This document shows, one piece after another, positions 8,115-32,687 of a stretch of 34,979 nt of DNA. The translations under genes and the position numbers were made by a program. The stretch lies in the NCBI RefSeq assembly GCF_001194135.2, contig NC_068986.1, positions 80,769,295-80,804,273 on the forward strand. The letters run 5' to 3'. The notes beneath the pieces were generated by a model, which saw nothing but the letters and a program-made list of their open reading frames with translations, was not told where the DNA came from and ran no database searches. This stretch comes from Octopus bimaculoides. Its lineage: Eukaryota. Within the stretch, counting starts at the first letter, position 1, and each line of letters opens with the position of its first letter.

Positions 8115-9394
8115 TTAGAGCTGCCACCATCAATGTTATCATACTGAAAGGTAGATCAGGTGTGTTAGGGGAGTTGATGTATGCTTTGTATGAAAGATAA
8201 GATTTTTAAAAAATGGTTTTTAGCCAAAGCCCTCACTGGTAAAGAACAACAGAACAAATTTTTCTGGGTTGGTAGCAGCAATGAAGTGGATGGTATAGGT
8301 ATATTAATAGCTGAGGAATGAATAGATAAAGTAATTGAGATATTGAAAGTGAATGATAGGATAATTAAGTTTAGACTAACTATTGGCAATTTGACAGTAA
8401 TACTCTTTCTTCTATAGGCAAAAAGCCTGAAATTTTGTGGAAGGAGGCTAGTCTATTACATCAGTCTCAGTCCTCAACTAGTATTTATCTAATTTATTGA
8501 CTTTGAAATGATGGGAGGCAAAGTTAACCTCAGCAGAATTTGAACTCGGAACATAAAAACATATGAAATGCCATTAAGCATTTTGCATGGTGTACTAATG
8601 ATTCTGCCAGATTTCTGCTTAATTTGACAGTAATTCTGATCTCTGTATACATACTGCAGCAAAGCAGGCCAATCAATCAAAAGACCACTTCTATGTGATC
8701 CTTCTACAGACTACTTCAATGATGAATGACAGTGTCCTCATTATTGTTACTTGTGACTTTAATGCACATGTTGGACTAAATGATGAGATCTTCCAAACTG
8801 TACATGACAGCTATGGATATGGTATTAAGGAATGAGGAGGGATCAAGGCTCTTGAAGTTCTGTGATGCAAATCGTCTAAAGATTTGCAACACTATCTTCA
8901 GGAAATCAGCCAGCTTCCTGATCATGTATCACACAAGCAAACTCATGAACCAAACAGGCTTCATTCTCTACAGAAAATAAGACAGATGGTTGGTTTTTGA
9001 AGAATGTGCTATCAAGTACAAGTTAATGATTAGTAACTTTAGAAGAAGATCTAGATGGATACAGAGTTTAGAGAAGAAAGATATGGAAGCTTAAAGAGCC
9101 ATCAAACTATCAGCATTTCAGATATGCATAAGTTGAAGCATTTGAAGAGAAGGAAGAGGAGAGAGAGACCTGTAACATGGAAGAAAATTGGGATTTTCTA
9201 TGAGACAACCTGCTAAGGCCTCAAACCAAATGTGTGACTGGCGCAAGGTCCCAACCTTGTGGAAGGTGACATTGAAGTGAAATACTGCTGTTGATAGAGT
9301 CATCTACTTCTTCCAAACTTGGATATACTACAAGAAGAGGGGTTACATAAAAAACAAACTATGAAGAAGATAAGAGAAACAAAACATCAAGTAT

Positions 9395-9696: not shown

Positions 9697-9830
9697 TTGG
9701 CACAAGGCTAACAGTTTTGTGGGAGGGGGTAAGTTGATTACATCGACCCCAGTGCTCAACTCGTACTTATTTTATCAACCCTGAAAGGATGAAAGGCAAA
9801 GTCAACCTCAGCAGAATTTGAACTCAAAAA
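9697..9830 (-). mobile_element. SINE family C copy
   Basis: gattacatcgaccccagtg...gaaaggatgaaaggcaaagtcaacctcagcagaatttgaactc. Confidence 0.75.
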
Positions 9831-10637: not shown

Positions 10638-11465
10638 GAAACATAGAGAAATATGTCATTTGATTAGTTGAAATCAGTCATGTGACCAGACTGTATTGTT
10701 TTGCTGCTATGTTAGTTATGTATTTTGGTCCTAGTTGTACCCCAAAATAGACTTTAACCAATCAAAATGGATATAAGCAGTTTAGGTTGTTTGAAGCTGC
10801 AGTTGTAAATAATAACCAATGGAATCACAGCTAATGTGCATGTAATGGTTGAACAAGGCTAAACTGAATGTGAGCAAAAATTTATGTGCAGCCATGTATA
10901 CGTGTGTATAAATTTGACTATGTGTATGTGAGCATCAGCTTATGGATATTCTCACTGTGTCTTTGTGTTCGTGCTATTTTTCGTATTGTGCAGAAAAGGT
11001 GTGAAACAAGTATGAAAGACCAAGAGGAGCAGAAAATGGTCACAAAGTTTTGTAATACATCAACAGCCTGGTTTTTGATATTGTTCTTTTGTATCAGTGT
11101 CAGAAACTAGGTTGTACAGAATACAGAAATTTTTTGATAAAATTTGCTGATAGTTTGTAGTATATAATCAAGAAAAAGAACAAAAATAAATATACCTGAT
11201 GTGGCGTATATACTTACACATCATGCATTTTATCATAAAATTTAAAAAAACGTTTTAAGTTTTGATTAATGAAAGTTTACAGATTGTTTTATTTGTTGAC
11301 AATAGTTACAATTCAAAATGGCCACATTCTCCTTTCCTTATAACCCTTAACCTTTTCTCAACTGAAGTGTATGATTTATGTTTAAATATAATGAGTAAAT
11401 ATATATGCCACACCCTGTAATTGTGTGTGTGCATGTGTGTACGTGCATACCTGCATGTATAATGT

Positions 11466-12424: not shown

Positions 12425-12667
12425 GGCCAATGCCAATACTGCCTGACTGGCACCCATGCCAGTGGCACATAAAAAGTGCCATTTGAGTGTGATCATTGCT
12501 AGTGCCGCCTGACTGGCTCCTGTGTCGGTGGCACGTAAAAAGCACCATTCAAATGTGGTCATTGCCAGTGCCGCCTGCCCGGCTCCCGTGCTGGTGGCAT
12601 GTAAAAAGCACCATTCAAATGTGGTCATTGCCAGTGCCGCCTGCCCGGCTCCCGTGCTGGTGGCATG
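12425..12667. repeat. 66-bp GC-rich minisatellite running into an N gap
   Basis: Units start at 12470, 12536 and 12602 (taaaaagcaccattcaaatgtggtcattgccagtgccgcctgcccggctcccgtgctggtggcatg). Confidence 0.9.
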
Positions 12668-15474
12668 NNNNNNNNNNNNNNNNNNNNNNNNNNNNNNNNN
12701 NNNNNNNNNNNNNNNNNNNNNNNNNNNNNNNNNNNNNNNNNNNNNNNNNNNNNNNNNNNNNNNNNNNNNNNNNNNNNNNNNNNNNNNNNNNNNNNNNNNN
12801 NNNNNNNNNNNNNNNNNNNNNNNNNNNNNNNNNNNNNNNNNNNNNNNNNNNNNNNNNNNNNNNNNNNNNNNNNNNNNNNNNNNNNNNNNNNNNNNNNNNN
12901 NNNNNNNNNNNNNNNNNNNNNNNNNNNNNNNNNNNNNNNNNNNNNNNNNNNNNNNNNNNNNNNNNNNNNNNNNNNNNNNNNNNNNNNNNNNNNNNNNNNN
13001 NNNNNNNNNNNNNNNNNNNNNNNNNNNNNNNNNNNNNNNNNNNNNNNNNNNNNNNNNNNNNNNNNNNNNNNNNNNNNNNNNNNNNNNNNNNNNNNNNNNN
13101 NNNNNNNNNNNNNNNNNNNNNNNNNNNNNNNNNNNNNNNNNNNNNNNNNNNNNNNNNNNNNNNNNNNNNNNNNNNNNNNNNNNNNNNNNNNNNNNNNNNN
13201 NNNNNNNNNNNNNNNNNNNNNNNNNNNNNNNNNNNNNNNNNNNNNNNNNNNNNNNNNNNNNNNNNNNNNNNNNNNNNNNNNNNNNNNNNNNNNNNNNNNN
13301 NNNNNNNNNNNNNNNNNNNNNNNNNNNNNNNNNNNNNNNNNNNNNNNNNNNNNNNNNNNNNNNNNNNNNNNNNNNNNNNNNNNNNNNNNNNNNNNNNNNN
13401 NNNNNNNNNNNNNNNNNNNNNNNNNNNNNNNNNNNNNNNNNNNNNNNNNNNNNNNNNNNNNNNNNNNNNNNNNNNNNNNNNNNNNNNNNNNNNNNNNNNN
13501 NNNNNNNNNNNNNNNNNNNNNNNNNNNNNNNNNNNNNNNNNNNNNNNNNNNNNNNNNNNNNNNNNNNNNTTATCGGTAAAACCATTTATAATCATAAATA
13601 TACAGGGATTAGCATGAGTTGCTTCTCCAACATACTGAAAATTTAGAAATAGCAGTCAAAGAACTACTGATTCCAAACTACAAATTTTTTTCTCTAACGG
13701 ATGGCGATATTTATGGCACACACAGAACAAAAAACAGAAGAGAAAAGCAAAAACAAATCTGCCTTTAGTTAATTGAGTACGATGTTTCATGGTTAAGAGT
13801 ATGAAGGTACTCTATTCCGATCTTCAGCCCAATATTCGAATAAATTTGAAAGTGTCTATATAACTCATGGGAATTTTGACCATGCGACATCAAAAACACA
13901 TGAGGAAGGCACTTACAAAATTTATTGGCTAGTACGTTCAAATACTTCACTCCAAAGAATCTATTCCATGTGCGCCGCAAATAGTCCCGCATAAAAAGTC
14001 CCGTATAAAAGGGTTACAGTTTAACCATCCAATTAGAGGCATCAATATAAATATACAGATATAGGGCAGGGAATCGTCAATTAGTAATAAAATTAATAAC
14101 TAACAATTTTGCCAAGTAGTTCAGTATANNNNNNNNNNNNNNNNNNNNNNNNNNNNNNNNNNNNNNNNNNNNNNNNNNNNNNNNNNNNNNNNNNNNNNNN
14201 NNNNNNNNNNNNNNNNNNNNNNNNNNNNNNNNNNNNNNNNNNNNNNNNNNNNNNNNNNNNNNNNNNNNNNNNNNNNNNNNNNNNNNNNNNNNNNNNNNNN
14301 NNNNNNNNNNNNNNNNNNNNNNNNNNNNNNNNNNNNNNNNNNNNNNNNNNNNNNNNNNNNNNNNNNNNNNNNNNNNNNNNNNNNNNNNNNNNNNNNNNNN
14401 NNNNNNNNNNNNNNNNNNNNNNNNNNNNNNNNNNNNNNNNNNNNNNNNNNNNNNNNNNNNNNNNNNNNNNNNNNNNNNNNNNNNNNNNNNNNNNNNNNNN
14501 NNNNNNNNNNNNNNNNNNNNNNNNNNNNNNNNNNNNNNNNNNNNNNNNNNNNNNNNNNNNNNNNNNNNNNNNNNNNNNNNNNNNNNNNNNNNNNNNNNNN
14601 NNNNNNNNNNNNNNNNNNNNNNNNNNNNNNNNNNNNNNNNNNNNNNNNNNNNNNNNNNNNNNNNNNNNNNNNNNNNNNNNNNNNNNNNNNNNNNNNNNNN
14701 NNNNNNNNNNNNNNNNNNNNNNNNNNNNNNNNNNNNNNNNNNNNNNNNNNNNNNNNNNNNNNNNNNNNNNNNNNNNNNNNNNNNNNNNNNNNNNNNNNNN
14801 NNNNNNNNNNNNNNNNNNNNNNNNNNNNNNNNNNNNNNNNNNNNNNNNNNNNNNNNNNNNNNNNNNNNNNNNNNNNNNNNNNNNNNNNNNNNNNNNNNNN
14901 NNNNNNNNNNNNNNNNNNNNNNNNNNNNNNNNNNNNNNNNNNNNNNNNNNNNNNNNNNNNNNNNNNNNNNNNNNNNNNNNNNNNNNNNNNNNNNNNNNNN
15001 NNNNNNNNNNNNNNNNNNNNNNNNNNNNNNNNNNNNNNNNNNNNNNNNNNNNNNNNNNNNNNNNNNNNNNNNNNNNNNNNNNNTATGTATGTATGTGCAT
15101 GTATATATATATATATATATATAAAGTAAAAGATGGCAATAGGAAAAGCATCAAGCCATAGAAACCAAACTGAAATGGCCTTTAAGTAAGACATGGTCTC
15201 TGATCCTTTTAGGAGGGTAGTATTTCCAAATAAGAACTAACTCATTCATGAGTATCTATCAAACCTCTATCTAGTAAAGTAGGAATAAAATATGGGAAAT
15301 GCTGGTGATATATATTGCTTGAAGAATCATACTTAGTAATGGTGTCATAGTAATAATTGTGTGACTCATCAGCTTCAAATGAATATATGAACTTTATTAT
15401 ATACATTGAATACTCGTTCTCTTTTTGTATATCTAAACATCTTGTCCATATCGTTGTCCACAGCTGAACTGAAC

Positions 15475-15609
15475 ATGGGTAATGAAGAGATATTATATGA
15501 AGAAAGCTGTAATAAATTGTTCGTCAAATTACCAGACAGATGGGAAATTGTATGGAAAGTAACCAACTTGGTTATGGCAGTTTTCTTCTTCTTGGCTGCT
15601 TTTGTTAAT
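15475..15609 (+). CDS. TMEM220: TMEM220-like protein, coding exon 1 (MGNEEILYEESCNKLFVKLPDRWEIVWKVTNLVMAVFFFLAAFVN)
   Basis: Acceptor ttgtccacag ends at 15463, in-frame ATG at 15475, donor AAT|gtaagt at 15610. VWKVTNLVMAVFFFLAAFVN resembles the vertebrate TMEM220 N-terminus as I recall it ([20 protein letters not shown]). The true start could lie in an upstream exon. Confidence 0.88.
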
Positions 15610-16030
15610 GTAAGTATTCAGTGTGTTTGTGGAATGGTGTTGTAGTAATAATGTTGTTAGTGTTATTTTTGTTGTTTAACACCAGGTCAGCCCTGATCAA
15701 GTAGAGCTATGATCAGAGTTATTGTACAAGCTATGGTCAGAGTCAGGACAATATTTCCCTGTGTGTCCTTTTCTTTAAGAAGATATGGTATGGTTTGATA
15801 GAAAGATTTGGCTGTTATTTCTGCATAGAAGTTCATACATTGGTCAGTGGTGGTGGTGGTGGCTGTAGTGTTTTCGGGAATGATATGTTTTGGCATGGCA
15901 TAGTAACATTTCAGTGGTGGTGGAGTGTATTGGAGTCTGGTGGTGGTGAAAGTAGTGGTTGTAGTGTTTGGGGGNNNNNNNNNNGGGGGGGGGGGCGGTG
16001 TAGTGGTATGTTGTGGCTTGGACTAGTAAA

Positions 16031-16348
16031 ATACACCTGTTTACACCAGCACACACACACACACGCACACACACACGCACACACACACACAGGTACACAA
16101 AAATATAATATTAGTGTCAACAGCGATGAGAATAGTCAGAATGGCAGGTAACAGGTAGACAGGCTGTGAATAGAGATAAAAGACATTGATATGATTGATG
16201 AACTCTCCTGTCTTTATTGCTACAGAAATACAATCCTTCTGGGCCAATTAGCTTAGAGAATAATCAAGTATTTGGAAGATTTTAGTGAAATAATTAACAT
16301 TTTCATGATTAACCTGGTCTTTGGAACATGACTTAAGCAAAGGTTCAG
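16031..16348 (-). pseudogene. Inverted duplicate of TMEM220 intron 2 end, exon 3 and intron 3 start (copy of 19285-19630)
   Basis: The reverse complement aligns to 19285-19630. The 58 exon nt at 16106-16163 are identical to 19472-19529. The intronic part has 7 substitutions plus a 2-nt indel over ~187 nt. A 36-nt deletion (19530-19565 equivalent) removes the donor. Confidence 0.93.
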
Positions 16349-16459
16349 TATTGGTCTGGAATTTGACAGTGTTGACAGGCCAGAACTTGGGTTGAGTCCT
16401 TCTCTGGAAATACTCTACCCTTATACCCTACCAGGATCAAAGATATATACATATATATA

Positions 16460-16934
16460 CACAGGAGTTGGGCAAAATAATGGAAACACCTGGCATCATA
16501 GCATCATAATTTTGAAATATCTATAAAACTGTCAAAAGCTTGTTTATTTTTATGTTTTTTGATTTAGTATTAGTGTTGCTTAATGTTTTGCTAAAATTGC
16601 TGTTTCTTTTCAGATATCATCAGCAAAGGTAATTAAAATTCATTAAAATGACAGATCTAAGGGACTTTCAAAGAGGTCAAATTGTTGGTGCTCTTATGGC
16701 AGGCGCTAGTGTAACAAAAACAGCCGAAATGTTTAGTGTATCAAGAAGTATTGTCTTGAAAGTAACGACAACCTTTGAGAAAGAGGGAAAAACCTCCTCG
16801 TTGAAACAAAACTCCGGAAGAGAACCAAAACTTTTTGATAGGAACCGTCAGACTCTTACACGAATTATTAGAAAGGATCACAAAAGTACAGCTCCCAAAA
16901 TTACTGCAGAGCTTAATGACCACCTTGAGAACCC
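16460..16934 (+). mobile_element. Tc1-family transposon, 5' half (left TIR + HTH domain, truncated)
   Basis: TA|cacaggagttgggcaaaataatggaaacacc TIR. ORF from 16648, MTDLRDFQRGQIVGALMAGASVTKTAEMFSVSRS...SGREPKL, is a Tc1 paired-like HTH. Homology stops at LNDHLENP. Confidence 0.88.
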
Positions 16935-17470
16935 GGAGATAAAAGGACTGTCATGGACACATGTTTCTGGCTCAATAACAGATTCTCTTATTTCAAGGAT
17001 TCTGTGAAAACATGTCTGGTCCTGGGGAAATATGACCTTGCTTGGCAACAAGCCAGGCATCAAACCATAGAAAATCTACCTTAATAAATTATATCTAACC
17101 CTTGCAAGCATAGAAAAATGGAAGATAAATAATGATGATGTACTTTATTCATTCCAGTTTCATCAGTTAATCCAGTGATATCTTTTAACCAAACATCCTT
17201 TAATCCATTGCATTATTTTATCCAGAGATACTCTCTTATCCAATAACATCTATCCAATATCCAGTATATCTCTTGATCTAATAATACATATTGGATGATA
17301 TCCTTTGATCTCACAACAATATCATGTAATGCTATAAAATGTTCTCTGTTTTCTTAATATTAATCTTACAATGAGTAATCTACTATTGATCTCACTCTTT
17401 AAATGTTTTTAGTCTTATCACTCTTTATGCAGTATTATTAATTAATCTCATTCTATATCATTTCTTATAG

Positions 17471-17500
17471 CACAATGACAGTGATTGGTACATCTGGATT
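17471..17500 (+). CDS. TMEM220: TMEM220-like exon 2, 30-nt micro-exon (HNDSDWYIWI)
   Basis: tttcttatag|CACAAT...TGGATT|gtaagt, phase 0-0. Matches the family VNDPD..W motif. Confidence 0.88.
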
Positions 17501-18651
17501 GTAAGTAGGATTTATTTTAATCTCAATCTCCATCTCTGATAATCATCTCTCTGTATTATGAATATGACTTAATCATTTCTCTTTTTAACCCTTCTTAAGT
17601 AAAACATAACCCCTTATTCTTCTGACCCCTTCGTAATTCATTGAAAACAAAGTTTAGCAAAGTTTCAACATTGGTGTTTCATGTTTGTGAGATACAAAAC
17701 TATTCAGTGAGTTGTTTAAAATTATAGAAAACAATGTGCGAATCTCAATATACAAAGGAAAGCACACGCACACATATGTATGTACATACGTACATACATA
17801 CATACATACATACATACACACATACGTACGTACGTACGTACATACATATTACTTGTGTGTATGTATATTAGATAATTAATGAAATAAATTACTCTGATTT
17901 AATCTTTACTTTAATCATTAACACTCAATCCCTGTTAACCCTAATGTCTTATCAATCCTTAGTCACAATGTATTAAAACCAGTAGCTCAGTCATATATCT
18001 TCAATAATCACTGACTAAAACCTCATTAATCACTGACTAAAAGTTCCTTAATCACTTAGCACAAATTAAAGATTCTTTAATCACTATTTGTTAATCTACT
18101 TTAAACATTTGCATTAAATTTTCTCTAATCTCTCTAATTTAATCTTCCTAATTACTTTCTCTTAATCTTTTTAATCTGTATTACCTAAACTTTCTTAATC
18201 TCACTTTATTCTATGTAATTGGAAGATGTTTGAGTTACAGAAATAGTAACACACCAGATCAAATATTGTAGAGTGTTTGATTTCAATGCTCTGAATTCTG
18301 AGTTCAAATCCTATTAAAATCCATTGTTTCCACAACCCCTCTGGGGTCAACAGAATAGATCCTAGTCATACACAGTGACCTGTACAAGCAACTGTATATC
18401 TCACATATCTTGACTTTGTGTCAGTATTCTCTAAAAAATTTGGTTTCAGTTCTTCTTCATTAATCTTCTCATATCCCTGTGTGAGTTTATGCTCATCATA
18501 TAATTTCTATTCTGCCTACTCTGTTGGAATGACTACCAGTCCAGTTACTGGTGCAGCCATACCTCCCACAAATGGTCACATCTTAGTTGTTCTGCTGGAT
18601 CAAGGACTGTAGTTCTGTCTACTAATGACTACATGGTACCTAAAACTATTA

Positions 18652-18878
18652 GCGAGCTGGCAGAAACGTTAGCACGCCGGGCGAAATGCTTGGCGGTATT
18701 TCATCTGCTGTTACGTTCTGAGTTCAAATTCCGCTGAGGTCGACTTTGCCTTTCATCCTTTCGGGGTCGATAAATTAAGTACCAGTTATGCACTGGGGTC
18801 GATGTAATCGACTTAATTCCTTTGTCTGTCCTTGTTTGTTCCCTCTATGTTTAGCCCCTTGTGAGCAATAAAGAAATA
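18652..18878 (+). mobile_element. tRNA-derived SINE family C (Meta-domain-like), well preserved
   Basis: A-box TGGCAGAAACG, B-box GAGTTCAAATT, central gactttgcctttcatcctttcggggtcgataaattaagtacc, A-rich tail. Confidence 0.8.
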
Positions 18879-18959
18879 TAAAACAATTAGCAAAAGCATG
18901 GTATATTACAAAGTCAATCCTCAATTCTATGTGATGACTATTATATAATTTCTAACTCA

Positions 18960-19165
18960 AGCACAAAGTGACAGGTTTTGGATGACAGCTGTAGTTGACT
19001 AAATTGTCTCCAGGATCAGACTGGTACTTATTTTATTAATCTTAGTAGGATGAAAGGCAAAGTTGACAGCTGAAGGAAATTGAGTACCAACTCTGGAGGG
19101 ATGTAACTAAATACTGAAAAACATTTAGTCTAACTCACACTGGTTCTATCAATCAGTGACTTCAT
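18960..19165 (-). mobile_element. SINE family C, degenerate, inverted next to the 18652 copy
   Basis: ctggtacttattttatt...aggatgaaaggcaaagttgac. Confidence 0.65.
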
Positions 19166-19471
19166 TAATAGGACTGGGTTAATTCTTTTAATACCAAGTA
19201 TTCCAAGATAGACTTTGCTTCTATTATATATAACTATCAATATCAAAATGTTTGTATTTAAATCAAAATATTATAATTTTAACTCTGAACCTTTGCTTAA
19301 GTCATGTTCCAAAGACCAGGTTAATTATAAAAATGTTAATTATTTCACTAAAATCTTCCAAATACTTTATTATTCTCTAAACTAATTGGCCCAGAAGGAT
19401 TGTATTTCTGTAGCAGTAAAGACACAGGAGAGTTCATCTATCATATCAATGTCTTTTATCTCTGTTCACAG

Positions 19472-19532
19472 CCTGTCTACCTGTTACCTGCCATTCTGAC
19501 TATTCTCATCGCTGTTGACACTAATATTACGG
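19472..19532 (+). CDS. TMEM220: TMEM220-like exon 3, 61 nt (PVYLLPAILTILIAVDTNIT + G)
   Basis: tctgttcacag|CCTGTC...ACGG|gtttgt, phase 0-1. Resembles [20 protein letters not shown]. Confidence 0.88.
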
Positions 19533-19580
19533 GTTTGTAGATATATATACACACATATATATATATATTTTTGTGTACCT

Positions 19581-19611
<31 letters not shown>

Positions 19612-19839
19612 ATGGTTTGAACAGGTGTATAGCATTATATCTATTTATGTGAAAAAATGACTTAACTGTTTCGTAAACAGATATTGATAAAATAAATACA
19701 ATTTGGATTGATATGTTTGACTAAACCCTTGAAGGTAGTACCCAGCATGGCCAGAGTCAATGACTGAGACCATTAAAAAAGTAAAGAAAGAAAGAATATA
19801 ACATTAGTGTGCAACTGTTTTATTATTATTATAGAACTA

Positions 19840-21440
19840 TTTATATGATACTATACAACTGTCATTATATTACAATACAACCATTACAGTTGCTCTATAG
19901 TCTATGCTATTGAAACAAGTACTATATCACCATACCACTTATAGTACTATTGTTCTATTGCTTTAGAGGCAAGGACTATTATCACAGTATCATTACAACA
20001 TTCCTTTTCTATTGCTTCAGAAACAAGAAATATATCACTGTATTACTATTGGGTTGGCAAGAAAGTGATTTTGTTCTTCACAAATAGATAGAGTTACAAT
20101 TTTTTTTTAACGACTTTTGTCAATGTTATGATATTTCCCTTTTGACATTTGATAGTTGTTACTTTTAGTTTACTTTAGAAGCAAATTGCGCATAATTTTT
20201 TTGTCTACAGCTGATAGTTCAATGTCAATTTTAACATGGAGTGCAAAAACAAACATTTTCGCCATAGTTTGCTTTTTTTATTTCTGTAAAGGCAAGAAAG
20301 CTGCTGAGGCTCACAAAGAGATGTGTGAAGTTTATGATGTTGATTGCTTAACAGAATGCACATGTCAGAAATGGTTTGAAAAATTCTGTTCTGGAGATTT
20401 TTCACTCAAAGATGACTAACGTTCTGGTCAACCTACTGAAGTTGATGATGACCGAATCAAAGCCATAATTGAATCTGATTGTCATATAACTGTGTGAAAG
20501 ATTGCAGAGAGGTTAAATGTATTATACACAACAATTTAAAATCACTTAAAATGTCTTGGACTTGTTAAGAAGCTTGATATTTGGGTTCCACATAAATTGA
20601 AAGAGATTCACTTAACACAAGGAATCAATGTTTGTGTTATGCTTCTCAAACGCAATGAAATCGACCTTTTTTTGAAATGAATCATCACTGGTGATGAAAA
20701 ATGGATTGTCTATAATAACATCAATTGAAAACGATCGTGCTCCAAGCATAATGAACCAGCACAAACCACATTGAAAGCTTAAATGCAAAAAATAACAGCA
20801 AGTCATGCTGTCAATTTGGTGGGATTACAAAGGTGATGTGTATTTTGAGCTGCTTCCAAAGAACCAAATGATAAATTCAGATGTTTACTAACAACAACTA
20901 ATGAAACTAGAGGAAGCAATCAACAACCAGAATTGGCAAATTGTAAAGAAATCGTGTTTCATCATGACAATGCTAGACCACAACATGCCTTTGCTAATTC
21001 ATAAAAAAATATCGGAGCTTGGTTGGGAAGTGATGTCACATCCACCATATAGCCCAGACCTTGCACCATCAGATTATCATTTATTTCGAAGTTTGAAAAA
21101 TTCTTTGAATGGTGAAACTTTCAATAACGATGATGACTTGAAATCGCATTTGCTTTAGCTTTTGGCTGATAAGGACCAGAAGGTCTCTGAACACGGAATC
21201 GTGAAGTTGCCAAAAGGATGGCAAAAGGTCATTGAATAAAATGGAAAATATATAATTGATTAAAGCTCATTCTTTGTATGAAAAAAGAAAATGGCATTTT
21301 TTCACACTAAAAAACTGAAATTACTTTCTTGTCAACCGAATATATTACTACTATTCTATTACTATAGATGCAAGGACTATATCATTGTACCACTATAGTA
21401 CTGCTGTTCTATTGCTATAAAAACAAGTGCTATATTATTA
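19840..21440. repeat. Degenerate minisatellite (ctatatca...ttctattgct...caag) split by the mariner
   Basis: Same motifs at 19840-20048 and 21341-21440. Confidence 0.6.
20049..21340 (+). mobile_element. Full-length inactive mariner (DD34D, mellifera-like) in TMEM220 intron 3
   Basis: TA target duplication at 20047-48 and 21341-42. TIRs ttgggttggcaagaaagtgattt / aaattactttcttgtcaaccgaa. Transposase from ATG 20236 with WVPHKL, ITGDEKW, HDNA and YSPDLAPSDYHLF, carrying many stops and frameshifts. Confidence 0.95.
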
Positions 21441-21650
21441 AAATATTAGTAAACTGGTATATAATTGTATCCCCTCAATTATATGATATTCTTTCTATAA
21501 TAGATTTTTTTTTATGGAGTAATATTTAATGTAGCATTTGGTAAATTTCTCCCAAATTCTCACTGAACTAAGAATATTCCCAGACTGATAGCAAAGATAA
21601 CAATTGAGAAATGGTAGGCAGCAGTCTGAGTGTATTGTTTGTAATTGCAG

Positions 21651-21783
21651 AAAATAAATATTGGAAGAATTTGGCTTTGGTGCACCTGCTGATGTGTTGT
21701 GCTTTCTCTGTCTACCAACTTATCATCCTACATGAAGTCTACAATGATAAATTCTCCAACCCACTTCGAGTGGAGGAAGGACG
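21651..21783 (+). CDS. TMEM220: TMEM220-like exon 4 ((E)NKYWKNLALVHLLMCCAFSVYQLIILHEVYNDKFSNPLRVEEG(R))
   Basis: aattgcag|AAAATA...GGACG|gtgagt, phase 1-2. Ends in the family EEGRE motif. Confidence 0.92.
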
Positions 21784-21977
21784 GTGAGTATTTTCTGCTG
21801 TCACAACCGCTTTGCTAACAGAACCTTTCAGACCACCTCGTGATCTTCTGCATACATACACACATACATGCATACACACATTTGCATGCATACACATGCA
21901 CATACACACACATGTACACTTGTGTACACACAAACACACACGCATGCGCACAAACACACACACACGCGCGCACACAC

Positions 21978-22011
<34 letters not shown>

Positions 22012-24118: not shown

Positions 24119-24184
24119 AGAATTTGTTGGTCTTGCCATAATAGTTTTCTGGTTGTCTGTGTGTCGTTTCATGTCCCTGCCCAG
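24119..24184 (+). CDS. TMEM220: TMEM220-like exon 5 ((R)EFVGLAIIVFWLSVCRFMSLP(S))
   Basis: atatttacag|AGAATT...CCCAG|gtaata, phase 2-2. Resembles RELSGLVIITAWIILC. Confidence 0.92.
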
Positions 24185-27292: not shown

Positions 27293-27583
27293 AGTACATA
27301 CACTGTGTCTATCTGTTCAGTCGATATCTACACACTATGTCAATCAAAATAGTATTTACACACTGTGTCTATCTGTCTTTTTGTTCAGTTGCTGATGTCT
27401 CCCTGTCTGTTTGTTCAGTTGATGTCTACACAATGTGTAGATATTGAATGGATCATTCAATATCTACATACTGTGTCTGTCTATTCAGACACATTGTTTT
27501 TAATTTATCATCATGTAGTTATGAAAGAAAATCTGTTTTTCTATCCAATCATTGATATGATATTTCTATTGTCTTTTTTTCAG

Positions 27584-27725
27584 CCTCAGTGGACAGAGAA
27601 CCATAAAGGTGTTGTTTCTTTTATCTGTTGGTGTATCCTTGGTACCTCTGTTTTCCTGGGCACTCTGCTATGTTGGCAACTGGCACCAGGTCTTAGGGCA
27701 CTGCAAAGGAATGTTTGAATCTTGA
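27584..27725 (+). CDS. TMEM220: TMEM220-like exon 6, terminal (LSGQRTIKVLFLLSVGVSLVPLFSWALCYVGNWHQVLGHCKGMFES*)
   Basis: tttttttcag|CCTCAG...TCT TGA. Resembles LFPFISWVYIY...HCKTVI. The six exons total 567 nt = 188 aa + stop. Confidence 0.9.
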
Positions 27726-30344: not shown

Positions 30345-31452
30345 CAGAAAAAATTGCGAAAGGTTAGATTTGTATTTTTGGTGGCCACAAAGCACTGACG
30401 AAACAGGTGTTTGATGTACAATTTCTTGAAATTAGAAATCACCTGCTGGTCCATGGGCTGCAAGATAGGGGTGGTGTAGCGTGAAAGGTATAGATAGGGC
30501 TTTTATGAATTTAAATTCGTCCAGGATGTCATCTTCGAAGTTAGAAAGGTGAACAGGAGCATTATCGAGGATGAGGAGGGCCTTGAGAGGAAAATCGTTC
30601 TCCAGATCGTACATTTTTACTGCTGGTCCGAAGATAAGTTTGGTCCACATGGTGAAGAATTGCTTGGTGACCCAGGTTTTAACGTTTGCCTTCCACATCA
30701 TCTGCAGCTTCTCCTTCAAGATTTTGTGCAACTTGAACGCTTGTGTATTTTCGAAACGGTAGATGAGGAGCGGCTTAGTCTTCAAGTCTCCATACGCAGT
30801 GGAACAAAGGGCGACAGTTAGCCTATCTTTCATAGGTTTGTGGCTTGGCGTTTTCTTCTCCTCTGCAGTTATGTAGATTCTTCAGAGCTTTTTGTGTTTT
30901 TTTTTTTTTTTCAAAAATGGTCAGTTTCATCACAGTTAAATATCTGTTGTGCGATGTACCCCTCGGCTGCGATGAGTTGACGGAATTCACGCACGAAATC
31001 CTCAGCTGCCTTNNNNNNNNNNNNNNNNNNNNNNNNNNNNNNNNNNNNNNNNNNNNNNNNNNNNNNNNNNNNNNNNNNNNNNNNNNNNNNNNNNNNNNNN
31101 NNNNNNNNNNNNNNNNNNNNNNNNNNNNNNNNNNNNNNNNNNNNNNNNNNNNNNNNNNNNNNNNNNNNNNNNNNNNNNNNNNNNNNNNNNNNNNNNNNNN
31201 NNNNNNNNNNNNNNNNNNNNNNNNNNNNNNNNNNNNNNNNNNNNNNNNNNNNNNNNNNNNNNNNNNNNNNNNNNNNNNNNNNNNNNNNNNNNNNNNNNNN
31301 NNNNNNNNNNNNNNNNNNNNNNNNNNNNNNNNNNNNNNNNNNNNNNNNNNNNNNNNNNNNNNNNNNNNNNNNNNNNNNNNNNNNNNTGGTCTGGTTTTTA
31401 AATTTTTTTTCAAGATGGTGCAGGTCGTCGACGTGCTTCGGTCGTATTGACG
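30345..31452 (-). mobile_element. Tigger/pogo-family DDE_1 transposase remnant (frameshifted, gapped, interrupted by the LTR)
   Basis: Motifs IFNCDET, HKPMKDRLT, KPLLIY, WKANVKTWVT, KALLILDNAPVH, QPMDQQVISNFKKLY. Confidence 0.9.
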
Positions 31453-32495
31453 TGTAGTGAAACCACCTCTCTCGGTTATTTATTTACAAATGCGAACGTA
31501 GCGGGTAACATCTAGCCTTCAGTCTGCCTTGGACCCTGCTGATTGGCTCTTATTTGCGCGGCATTTGTCACCGGTTCTGTTTCGCGCCAGGGTGCATACC
31601 GACTAATCGTGGCCTTCTAATAAGGTCACGTGAGATAGTGTTTTTCTGATGTTTCTGGAGCCCCTTTTTACCTATAAATAGCCTGCTTTATCCACGCCAG
31701 TCGCGATTTCAGACCTCTCTGAGGTCTGGTCGTTGACCACCCAGCACCAGCAACAGTTTCCAGCGACGACATCAACACCACCGTTCAACTGTTTACTACA
31801 GTCTCGTCGCCAACGTCAACACGACGCTACTATTTACACAAGCCAGCAACCGCGGTTCATCTCGATACTGTTTGTGTGGATTGTTTCCACCACGAAAATA
31901 ACAGCCAGAACAACCTGCGAGAGTCTTCTGTATCCAAGTAACCGGTCGCAGCATCGTAGCCTCAACTTCTTCTCACATGTGACACTTCAGCTCTGCTATT
32001 CGGCCACAACCTCTTATGTACAGACATTCTATCTACTGTGTAACTCAACTATGAACTGGTACTTCCTTATTTTTGTGTTCAGGACGCTTATCATCCATAT
32101 TACAGACTATGAACTGGTATTTTCTTATCTTTGTGTCCAGGACGCTGATCGTCCATGTTACAGACTCATTTCCATGCTCTGTATTTCTCATTCACACGCA
32201 TACACATATTTATGTATACACTCTCTTGTTTGCACGACGGCCTGTCATATATATTGTGTTATTATTAGTATGCCACATTCACGTACACACAGACACACAG
32301 TTTACAACTCTAAATAAACTTACTCTTTATATATATTTAACGGTTGTGTCTCTCTCTTTCCTTGCTGGCATTTCCTCGCATTTCTTATGCGAGTTCTCTT
32401 ATGTTATTTTATATTTTGTGTCGACCATGCGACGCGTTAAAAGGAGCCTGTTCCATTCGTCGCCATCTCCTTGGTTCGCACGGTCGTTTTCTACA
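31453..32495 (+). mobile_element. 5' LTR (~1043 bp) of an LTR retroelement
   Basis: Termini TGTAG...CTACA, TATAAATA at 31673-31680, AATAAA at 32313-32318. A primer binding site starts 3 nt downstream. The first 47 bp are repeated exactly at 32641-32687. Confidence 0.85.
32049..32167 (+). repeat. 58-bp tandem duplication inside the LTR
   Basis: ctatgaactggta(c/t)tt(c/t)cttat(t/c)tttgtgt(t/c)caggacgct... repeats at 32049 and 32107. Confidence 0.85.
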
Positions 32496-32640: not shown

Positions 32641-32687
32641 TGTAGTGAAACCACCTCTCTCGGTTATTTATTTACAAATGCGAACGT
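32641..32687 (+). mobile_element. First 47 bp of the 3' LTR, cut by the Penelope-like element
   Basis: Identical to 31453-31499. Preceded by a weak purine-rich GGTGTGAGGCTA. Confidence 0.8.

What the first reader, a model, noticed from the sequence alone, without database searches (positions are those of the whole stretch)
16031..19630. Antisense near-perfect copy of TMEM220 exon 3 inside intron 1: a built-in exon-complementary arm for a long pre-mRNA hairpin
Seen: 16031-16348 is the reverse complement of 19285-19630. It covers ~187 nt of intron 2 including the pyrimidine tract and AG acceptor (7 substitutions + 2-nt indel). It then covers 58 of the 61 exon nt with no mismatches, while the donor is removed by a 36-nt deletion. 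The two arms lie in the same pre-mRNA about 3 kb apart and would loop out the 30-nt exon 2. Established: long intramolecular duplexes between an exon and an intronic complementary sequence are ADAR substrates, and coleoid cephalopods recode heavily by A-to-I editing. Inference: the duplex could drive clustered recoding in this transmembrane segment (TAC Y>C, ATT/ATC I>V, ACT T>A, GAC D>G, AAT N>D/S). It could also mask or edit the acceptor; skipping 61 nt would frameshift the protein. The 58/58 exon identity against ~96% flanking identity is suggestive but not statistically strong at this length.
Basis: partly seen in the sequence, partly recalled or inferred. Interest (0 to 1): 0.8.

Follow-up and report, generated by a model that had tools for sequence, protein, structure and literature searches.

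The report
Inverted exon copy in octopus intron
The octopus gene TMEM220 carries, in an upstream intron, a backwards copy of one of its own exons; the copy is real and inherited (a sister species has it too) and could fold the unspliced RNA into a long double strand, but it looks like a slowly decaying duplication, and whether it causes RNA editing is untested.

Summary
Window 16031-16348 is the reverse complement of 19285-19630. The match covers 187 intron nt with 7 substitutions and a 2-nt indel, then 58 of 58 exon nt. A 36-nt deletion removes the last 3 exon nt and the donor.

The gene is Octopus bimaculoides TMEM220. It is not an assembly artefact. Both arms lie in one gap-free contig. The nearby N gap sits in a poly-G run. 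The gap-free O. sinensis assembly has the same inverted copy, with the same outer boundary, in the orthologous intron.

The ancestral unit was about 518 nt and predates the split of the two species. It has decayed differently in each lineage. O. bimaculoides has the donor deletion and a Tc1/mariner-like fragment replacing the inner end. O. sinensis has a SINE insertion and 3 mismatches in the exon part.

The copy evolves at about the intron background rate. The 58/58 identity is expected (P about 0.29).

The arms would form a very stable duplex of about 300 bp. It covers exon 3, its pyrimidine tract and its AG. ADAR hyper-editing or splice-site masking is therefore a reasonable inference, but no RNA data could be reached. 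Selection for that role is not supported.

The parts
16031..16348 (-). Left arm: inverted (antisense) copy of the exon-3 region, lying in the intron between the 135-nt and 30-nt coding exons
   Evidence: The orthologous copy in O. sinensis is at L002 10593-10965 plus 11196-11285.
16106..16163 (-). Antisense copy of exon-3 nt 1-58, with 0 mismatches to 19472-19529
   Evidence: A tblastn hit on the minus strand reads VYLLPAILTILIAVDTNI.
16164..16348 (-). Antisense copy of the last 187 nt of the upstream intron, including the pyrimidine tract and AG (7 substitutions, 2-nt deletion)
16031..16105 (-). Outer part of the copy. It corresponds to 19566-19630 (intron downstream of exon 3) and contains a (CA)n tract. 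The junction of the 36-nt deletion is at about 16105/16106.
19285..19630 (+). Right arm (the source): 3' end of the intron (19285-19471), exon 3 (19472-19532), and the start of the next intron with (TA)n(CA)n and (TG)n tracts
19113..19284 (+). Part of the ancestral duplicated unit. It still has an inverted partner in O. sinensis but has lost it in O. bimaculoides.
19530..19565 (+). The 36 nt absent from the left copy (last 3 exon nt, GT donor, microsatellite). O. sinensis keeps this region in its copy.
16349..16934 (+). O. bimaculoides-specific Tc1/mariner-like transposon fragment that truncates the inner end of the left arm. The ORF at 16648-17007 has a transposase-type HTH.
15975..15984 (.). 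10-N gap inside a poly-G run. O. sinensis is collinear on both sides, so the scaffold join is sound.
15475..15609 (+). TMEM220 first coding exon of isoform X2 (ATG at 15475)
17471..17500 (+). TMEM220 30-nt exon (HNDSDWYIWI), inside the 2.9-kb loop between the arms
19472..19532 (+). TMEM220 61-nt exon (PVYLLPAILTILIAVDTNIT + G). It has 12 adenosines, 11 of which would recode if edited.
21651..21783 (+). TMEM220 next coding exon (133 nt)
24119..24184 (+). TMEM220 66-nt exon
27582..27725 (+). TMEM220 last coding exon, with stop

Best explanation
This is a real, inherited inverted segmental duplication. A piece of about 518 nt of O. bimaculoides TMEM220 (equivalent to window 19113-19630: end of one intron, the 61-nt exon, start of the next intron) was copied in reverse orientation into the upstream intron. 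This happened in an ancestor shared with O. sinensis, not long before the two lineages split.

Since then the copy has drifted roughly neutrally and has been damaged differently in each lineage.

Because both arms are transcribed in the same pre-mRNA, they can pair into a near-perfect duplex of about 300 bp. The duplex contains exon 3 with its pyrimidine tract and AG, and it loops out the 30-nt exon.

The likely consequence (inferred, not shown) is incidental. Molecules in which the upstream intron is still unspliced when exon 3 is made would be hyper-edited by ADAR on both arms, as at any intronic inverted-repeat pair. That would give some clustered recoding of the transmembrane segment, and possibly some interference with the exon-3 acceptor.

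I see no evidence that the arm is maintained for this purpose.
For: Shown:
- Arms and their details.
- Gene identity.
- Both arms lie in one gap-free contig, 15985-22011.
- The gap lies in poly-G, and O. sinensis is collinear across it.
- O. sinensis (locus L002, no Ns) has the inverted copy in the orthologous intron with the same outer boundary. Differences specific to left copy versus right copy are shared by both species.
- The inner boundary and a SINE insertion with a target-site duplication are defined in O. sinensis.
- A Tc1-like fragment replaces the inner end in O. bimaculoides.
- Site patterns give a near-star tree: 1-2 sites separating left copies from right copies, 2 species-specific sites, the rest singletons.
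- Left copy versus left copy between species is 4.9%, against an intron background of 6.4% (p = 0.20).
- The 58/58 identity is expected (P = 0.29).
- Argonauta has no such copy.
- Predicted duplex energy is -512.5 kcal/mol in O. bimaculoides and -550.5 in O. sinensis. The helix is kept in the global MFE: 301 pairs, 56/61 exon nt, and 22/22 nt of pyrimidine tract plus AG.

From the literature:
- A-to-I editing occurs mostly in dsRNA before splicing (abstract of PMC9105294).
- Most metazoan editing, octopus included in the survey, is clustered hyper-editing of long dsRNA formed by young, little-diverged repeats (PMC9989829).
Against: - No RNA-level data were available, so duplex formation in vivo, editing and any splicing effect are inferred.
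- Co-transcriptional removal of the upstream intron (1.86 kb) could occur before the right arm is transcribed about 1.8 kb later. The duplex may therefore form only in a minority of molecules.
- Two sites (19391 C/A in the intron, 19510 C/T in the exon) are shared by the two arms within a species but differ between species. Only 0.12 are expected from parallel mutation (P = 0.006). This hints at gene conversion or compensatory change, so evolution may not be purely neutral. One of the two is a CpG.
- The neutrality tests have little power (12 against about 16 expected substitutions).
Confidence: 0.7

Rival explanations
1. Selected editing complementary sequence. The arm is maintained because it directs ADAR to exon 3 and gives useful recoding of the transmembrane segment, and/or regulated masking of the acceptor.
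For: - A strong predicted exon-intron duplex exists in two species.
- There are 12 exon adenosines, 11 of them recoding, and 7 have a favoured 5' U or A neighbour.
- Two within-species co-varying sites exceed the expectation from parallel mutation.
- Left-versus-right divergence within O. bimaculoides (3.8%) is slightly below the between-species background (p = 0.09).
Against: - The copy diverges at about the neutral rate.
- The exon part in O. sinensis has 3 mismatches, so it is no better than the flanks.
- Each lineage has lost or interrupted part of the arm.
- 58/58 is unremarkable.
- One covarying site is a CpG, and gene conversion explains both sites equally well.
- No editing record for this gene was found.
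- Annotated isoforms in three Octopus species never skip the 30-nt or 61-nt exon.
Confidence: 0.12
2. Splicing or circRNA device. Pairing of the arms brings the ends of the loop together. This would promote skipping or back-splicing of the 30-nt exon, or hide the exon-3 acceptor to produce a frameshifted, NMD-targeted transcript as a means of dosage control.
For: - The arms flank the 30-nt exon.
- The acceptor and pyrimidine tract are fully paired in the predicted fold.
Against: - No annotated isoform lacks either exon.
- A 30-nt exon is very small for circularisation (own knowledge).
- The neutral-decay evidence applies here as above.
Confidence: 0.06
3. Hairpin-RNA / endo-siRNA source. The intramolecular duplex is diced into small RNAs that silence TMEM220 itself. 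This would resemble Drosophila hpRNA loci and plant proto-miRNAs, both born by inverted duplication of target-gene fragments.
For: - The geometry fits: an inverted duplication of a gene fragment, with a long near-perfect stem.
Against: - No small-RNA data were available.
- The 2.9-kb loop is long.
- The stem is half intronic and nuclear.
- ADAR editing would antagonise dicing (own knowledge).
Confidence: 0.05
4. Assembly artefact: a mis-scaffolded allelic haplotig or fold-back chimera next to the N gap.
For: - The copy starts 46 nt after a 10-N gap in a short-read scaffold that has 10 gaps in 35 kb.
Against: - There is no gap between the copy and the rest of the 6-kb contig that also holds exon 3.
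- The gap is a poly-G run, and O. sinensis is collinear across it.
- An independent gap-free assembly of a sister species has the same copy with the same boundary.
- The arms differ by about 4% plus indels.
Confidence: 0.01
5. Both arms are copies of a dispersed repeat family, and the 'exon' is an exonised transposable element.
For: - SINE-like and Tc1-like elements abound nearby.
Against: - No third copy exists in 63.6 kb of O. bimaculoides, 31.5 kb of O. sinensis or 35.7 kb of Argonauta.
- The exon encodes a conserved segment of the TMEM220 Pfam domain, present in all octopod orthologues.
Confidence: 0.01

Closest known systems
Exon-intron editing duplexes with an intronic editing complementary sequence (ECS), e.g. 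the GRIA2 (GluA2) Q/R site and Drosophila Syt1 (ECS concept: PMC5705066; details from own knowledge)
   Same: An intronic sequence is complementary to a coding exon of the same pre-mRNA. The duplex must form before splicing. It would place coding adenosines in dsRNA.
   Different: - Classical ECSs are short, imperfect, usually in the adjacent downstream intron, conserved, and give site-selective editing.
- Here the partner is a near-perfect, roughly 300-nt literal inverted copy, 3.4 kb upstream across another exon.
- It evolves neutrally, and no editing has been shown.
Intronic inverted-repeat pairs (inverted Alu/SINE) as hyper-editing substrates. Young repeats are the main ADAR targets across metazoans, octopus included (PMC9989829).
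   Same: Two little-diverged copies in opposite orientation lie a few kb apart in one transcript. The expectation is promiscuous clustered editing on both arms, probably without function.
   Different: - The arms are not transposable elements. They are a unique segmental duplication.
- One arm contains a constitutive coding exon and its acceptor, so by-product editing would reach the protein.
Drosophila hpRNA loci and plant proto-miRNA genes born by inverted duplication of target-gene sequence (own knowledge)
   Same: The origin is inverted duplication of a gene fragment, giving a long perfect hairpin complementary to the parent gene.
   Different: - Those are separate loci with short loops, and they are processed by Dicer.
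- Here one arm is the parent exon itself, the loop is 2.9 kb, and no small RNAs are known.
Intronic complementary sequences that promote exon circularisation or skipping (own knowledge)
   Same: Reverse-complementary sequences lie on both sides of an exon.
   Different: - The right arm runs into the next exon.
- The enclosed exon is only 30 nt.
- No back-splice or skipping evidence exists.

Membership tests
Intronic ECS / exon-intron ADAR substrate | Stable base-pairing between the exon around the edited site and an intronic sequence of the same pre-mRNA | tested here: met
   Cofold is -512.5 kcal/mol against -95 +/- 6 for shuffled arms. In the global MFE, 56/61 exon nt pair with the left arm. 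This is a prediction only.
Intronic ECS / exon-intron ADAR substrate | A-to-I editing observed in the exon (A>G in cDNA against genomic DNA) | not testable with these tools
   No RNA-seq reads or cDNA contigs of Octopus TMEM220 could be reached. Literature and supplement searches were negative but incomplete.
Intronic ECS / exon-intron ADAR substrate | ECS conserved above the neutral intron level, or complementarity kept by compensatory changes | tested here: not met
   Left copy versus left copy is 4.9% against a 6.4% background (p = 0.20). There are 3 exon mismatches in O. sinensis. Lineage-specific deletions and insertions are present. Only 2 covarying sites exist, one of them a CpG. Power is low.
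Intronic ECS / exon-intron ADAR substrate | Editing depends on the ECS (mutation or deletion test) | not testable with these tools
   This needs a minigene or genome edit.
Inverted-repeat hyper-editing substrate | Two copies of one sequence in opposite orientation within one transcription unit, a few kb apart, with low divergence | tested here: met
   96% identity in the 255-nt core, with 2936 nt between the arms. Both arms lie inside TMEM220 introns and exon on the + strand.
Inverted-repeat hyper-editing substrate | Arms derive from a dispersed repeat family | tested here: not met
   No further copies exist in the loci held. The arm contains a conserved coding exon.
Ancient inverted segmental duplication (pseudo-exon) | Present at the orthologous site, with the same boundary, in an independent assembly of a related species | tested here: met
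   O. sinensis L002 10593-11285. The outer junction ...AACAGGTGTAT|TTTAC is shared. Differences separating left copies from right copies are shared by both species.
Ancient inverted segmental duplication (pseudo-exon) | The copy accumulates disabling changes independently in each lineage | tested here: met
   O. bimaculoides has the 36-nt donor deletion, a 2-nt deletion and the Tc1-like replacement. O. sinensis has the SINE insertion with a target-site duplication and exon substitutions.
Assembly artefact (haplotig or fold-back chimera) | The copy is bounded by gaps, or is absent from independent assemblies | tested here: not met
   The contig 15985-22011 is continuous. The gap is in poly-G with conserved flanks. 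The copy is present in O. sinensis.
circRNA-promoting flanking inverted repeats | Back-splice junction reads for the enclosed exon | not testable with these tools
   No RNA data were available.

The most novel reading that the evidence does not exclude
The inverted copy is a newborn, Octopus-lineage-specific editing complementary sequence. It would create clustered recoding (Y>C, I>V, T>A, D>G, N>D/S) in the second transmembrane helix of TMEM220, but only in species that carry the arm. Its complementarity to the exon would be actively kept (two co-varying sites; 58/58 in O. bimaculoides). That would be a caught-in-the-act example of how a cephalopod recoding cluster is born by inverted duplication of an exon.
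Probability: 0.12. Interest if true: 0.6.

Novelty: new member of a known kind. Interest (0 to 1): 0.35.

Why it matters
How new ADAR recoding sites arise is an open question, especially in coleoid cephalopods. There the required dsRNA is usually assumed to be formed by the coding sequence itself.

This locus is a clean natural experiment. It has a dated, unique inverted duplication that puts a constitutive coding exon into a near-perfect duplex of about 300 bp. Two species carry differently damaged versions of the arm, and Argonauta lacks it.

Existing RNA-seq and DNA-seq of O. bimaculoides, O. sinensis and O. vulgaris could show the following:
- whether such an arm is sufficient to impose clustered recoding;
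- how editing depends on mismatches and on distance to the partner;
- whether the pairing disturbs splicing.

The pair would have been missed by a published screen that looked for reverse-complement partners only within +/-2000 nt (PMC9989829). The exon and its partner are about 3.4 kb apart.

If there is no editing, the locus is an ordinary decaying duplication.

Tried and rejected
1. Haplotig or mis-scaffold: rejected.
2. Dispersed-repeat origin: rejected. No other copies were found.
3. Extra conservation of the exon part as a sign of selection: rejected.
4. O. vulgaris locus: one gene model spans 113 kb so no DNA was returned, and the other isoform is not on record.
5. An independent raw-read contig across the copy, sought by looking up the copy-specific 68-aa minus-strand ORF: not on record.
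6. Evidence of editing from transcript-derived protein variants. The O. bimaculoides/O. sinensis/O. vulgaris cluster holds only genome-annotation proteins. The Logan transcript cluster is from other octopods, and its variants are not A>G-type.
7. Literature. No paper combines TMEM220 with RNA editing. PMC5499236 is not held. The recoding table of PMC9989829 has no 'transmembrane protein 220' entry, but it is truncated as stored. No precedent paper for an ECS born by inverted exon duplication was retrieved.
8. An Rfam scan of the whole window found no known RNA family.
9. The loss of the donor as a meaningful feature: rejected. The copy's splice signals are on the other strand. The deletion lies in a microsatellite that has instead expanded in O. 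sinensis.
Full report
**1. Observation**

The repeat finder reports inverted arms 16209-16348/19285-19424 (140 nt, 96%) and 16097-16211/19424-19538 (115 nt, 95%). There is also a lower-identity outer extension to 16031/19630. A gapped alignment joins them into one match with E = 2e-99.

Column by column:
- The 187 intron nt upstream of the exon differ by 7 substitutions and one 2-nt indel.
- Exon nt 1-58 (19472-19529 against 16163-16106) are identical.
- 36 nt (19530-19565) are missing from the left copy. They comprise the last 3 exon nt, the GT donor and a (TA)n(CA)n(TA)n run.
- Then come 16 identical nt, a (CA)n/(TG)n tract and a common outer end.

Every number in the finding is correct. This pair is the only high-identity repeat pair in the 35-kb window.

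**2. Gene and species**

A tblastn lead and inspection of splice sites give these exons on the + strand:
- 15475-15609
- 17471-17500 (30 nt)
- 19472-19532 (61 nt)
- 21651-21783
- 24119-24184
- the last coding exon at 27582-27725

The conceptual protein is 100% identical to O. bimaculoides TMEM220 isoform X2. It matches Pfam PF15071 (E = 2e-25). The window equals CM046606.1 at about 80.769-80.804 Mb of assembly GCA_001194135.2.

Isoforms X1 and X3 add a 5' exon upstream of the window. The 142-aa and 159-aa forms read through the donor of the 66-nt exon. No annotated isoform in three Octopus species skips the 30-nt or the 61-nt exon.

**3. Artefact or real?**

The window is a short-read scaffold with ten N gaps. 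Both arms nevertheless lie in one uninterrupted contig, 15985-22011. The 10-N gap at 15975-15984 sits in a poly-G run inside a GTG-rich tandem repeat. O. sinensis is collinear on both sides of it.

The decisive point is O. sinensis. Its TMEM220 locus (L002, GCA_006345805.1, no N at all) carries the same inverted copy in the orthologous intron:
- L002 10593-10965 matches window 19568-19196 on the opposite strand at 94%.
- The outer junction is identical in the two species.
- Several differences that separate left copies from right copies are shared by both species. These are 19368 T/G and three sites in the outer 14 nt.

The duplication therefore happened once, before the species split. It is not an assembly error.

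Argonauta hians (L001) has the exon but no inverted copy.

**4. History of the copy**

In O. sinensis the copy runs further inward, to the equivalent of window 19113. The ancestral unit was therefore about 518 nt.

Later events differ by lineage.

In O. bimaculoides:
- the 36-nt microsatellite-associated deletion;
- a 2-nt deletion;
- replacement of the inner 172 nt, plus about 300 nt of flanking intron, by a 586-nt Tc1/mariner-like fragment (16349-16934; its ORF has HTH_23/HTH_28).

In O. sinensis:
- a SINE insertion with a target-site duplication inside the copy;
- a 179-nt insertion and a tight cluster of 8 substitutions plus a 4-nt deletion in the right arm;
- three mismatches in the exon part of the copy, whose donor region survives as ATGA|GTTTGT.

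**5. Tests for selection**

The four-sequence site patterns are almost a star. There are 1-2 sites separating left copies from right copies, 2 species-specific sites, and otherwise singletons.

Divergence figures:

| Comparison | Divergence | Test against 6.4% background |
|---|---|---|
| Intron background, O. bimaculoides vs O. sinensis | 6.4% (473/7388) | - |
| Left copy vs left copy, between species | 4.9% (12/246) | p = 0.20 |
| Left vs right arm, within O. bimaculoides | 3.8% | p = 0.09 |
| Left vs right arm, within O. sinensis | 6.6% | not lower (one-sided p = 0.61) |

The exon itself is held by coding constraint, so only the copy can change. On that basis 1.25 differences are expected in 58 nt, and P(0) = 0.29.

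The only non-neutral hint is two sites where both arms agree within a species but differ between species. These are 19391 C/A in the intron and 19510 C/T, a synonymous exon site. Parallel mutation predicts 0.12 such sites (P = 0.006). However, 19510 is a CpG. Inter-arm gene conversion would give the same pattern as compensatory selection.

**6. What it would do**

- The arms cofold at -512.5 kcal/mol. The core alone gives -411. Shuffled left arms give -95 +/- 6.
- In the MFE of the whole 3676-nt segment the long-range helix persists. It has 301 inter-arm pairs, covers 56 of 61 exon nt, and covers all 22 nt of the pyrimidine tract and AG.
- The O. sinensis arms give -550.5 kcal/mol.
- Exon 3 has 12 adenosines, all inside the perfect 58-bp stretch, and 11 would recode. 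Two intronic adenosines (19329, 19381) face C, a favoured context (the preference is own knowledge).

Long near-perfect dsRNA is promiscuously edited by ADARs. Editing precedes splicing (abstract of PMC9105294). Young, little-diverged repeats are the main targets across animals (PMC9989829).

The most likely outcome is by-product hyper-editing, and perhaps some acceptor occlusion, in those pre-mRNAs that still hold the upstream intron when exon 3 emerges. That fraction is unknown. The upstream intron can be spliced once the 30-nt exon is made, about 1.8 kb before the right arm.

All of this section is inference.

**7. Comparison with known systems and verdict**

It works like an intronic inverted-repeat dsRNA, and it is geometrically like an exon-intron ECS. 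It does not meet the ECS criterion of conservation, and editing is untested.

It also resembles the way hpRNA and proto-miRNA hairpins are born by inverted duplication of gene fragments.

It is a new member of a known kind. It is of moderate interest, mainly as a cheap natural experiment on how recoding clusters could arise. The artefact alternative is refuted. The adaptive reading is not supported, but it is not excluded.

Noticed in passing
window 16349-16934 (ORF 16648-17007, + strand): A Tc1/mariner-like transposon fragment with an N-terminal transposase HTH (Pfam HTH_23/HTH_28). It is present in O. bimaculoides but absent from the orthologous O. sinensis intron. It abuts and truncates the inverted copy.
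   Followed up: partly
window 16042-16092 and 19580-19611: The outer part of the duplex is a (CA)n:(UG)n alternating purine-pyrimidine tract of about 30-50 bp. Such tracts are prone to the Z conformation, and ADAR1-type enzymes carry Z-binding domains. This is speculative and was not tested. In O. sinensis this part is mostly (TA)n.
   Followed up: no
window 16145-16159 (+ strand): Read in the sense direction, the antisense exon copy contains two strong 5' splice-site-like motifs: CAG|GTAAC at 16145-16152 and CAG|GTAGA at 16152-16159. They lie inside the intron and could act as cryptic donors or U1 decoys.
   Followed up: no
window 15847-16010: A GTG-rich minisatellite (unit of about 67 nt) ends in a poly-G run that contains the 10-N gap. 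O. sinensis has one unit fewer and a short G run.
   Followed up: partly
L002 14595-14630 (equivalent to window 19304-19337): The O. sinensis right arm has a cluster of 8 substitutions plus a 4-nt deletion within about 34 nt. The other three copies are identical to each other in this stretch. It looks like a local multi-nucleotide mutation event.
   Followed up: no
window 18652-18880; also 8450-8610 and 9730-9829; L002 10965-11195: A SINE-like element of about 220 nt has several copies in both orientations in the locus. One copy inserted, with a target-site duplication, into the O. sinensis inverted arm.
   Followed up: partly
window 24184/24185: Read-through of the donor of the 66-nt exon (CCC AG|G TAA) gives the annotated short isoforms ending ...SLPR (142 and 159 aa). 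The same short form dominates transcript-derived proteins of another octopod (P0011, 67 contigs). One O. vulgaris model (P0002) instead skips this exon.
   Followed up: partly
window 31453-31499 and 32641-32687: A perfect 47-nt direct repeat with copies 1.2 kb apart, just downstream of the N gap at 31013-31386.
   Followed up: no
L001 (Argonauta hians) 12478-12797, 15479-15785, 16136-16456 and others: The Argonauta TMEM220 introns are packed with SINE-like repeats of 250-320 nt in both orientations (80-86% identical). One starts 35 nt downstream of exon 3. That species therefore has ordinary TE-based inverted pairs near the same exon, but no exon copy.
   Followed up: no
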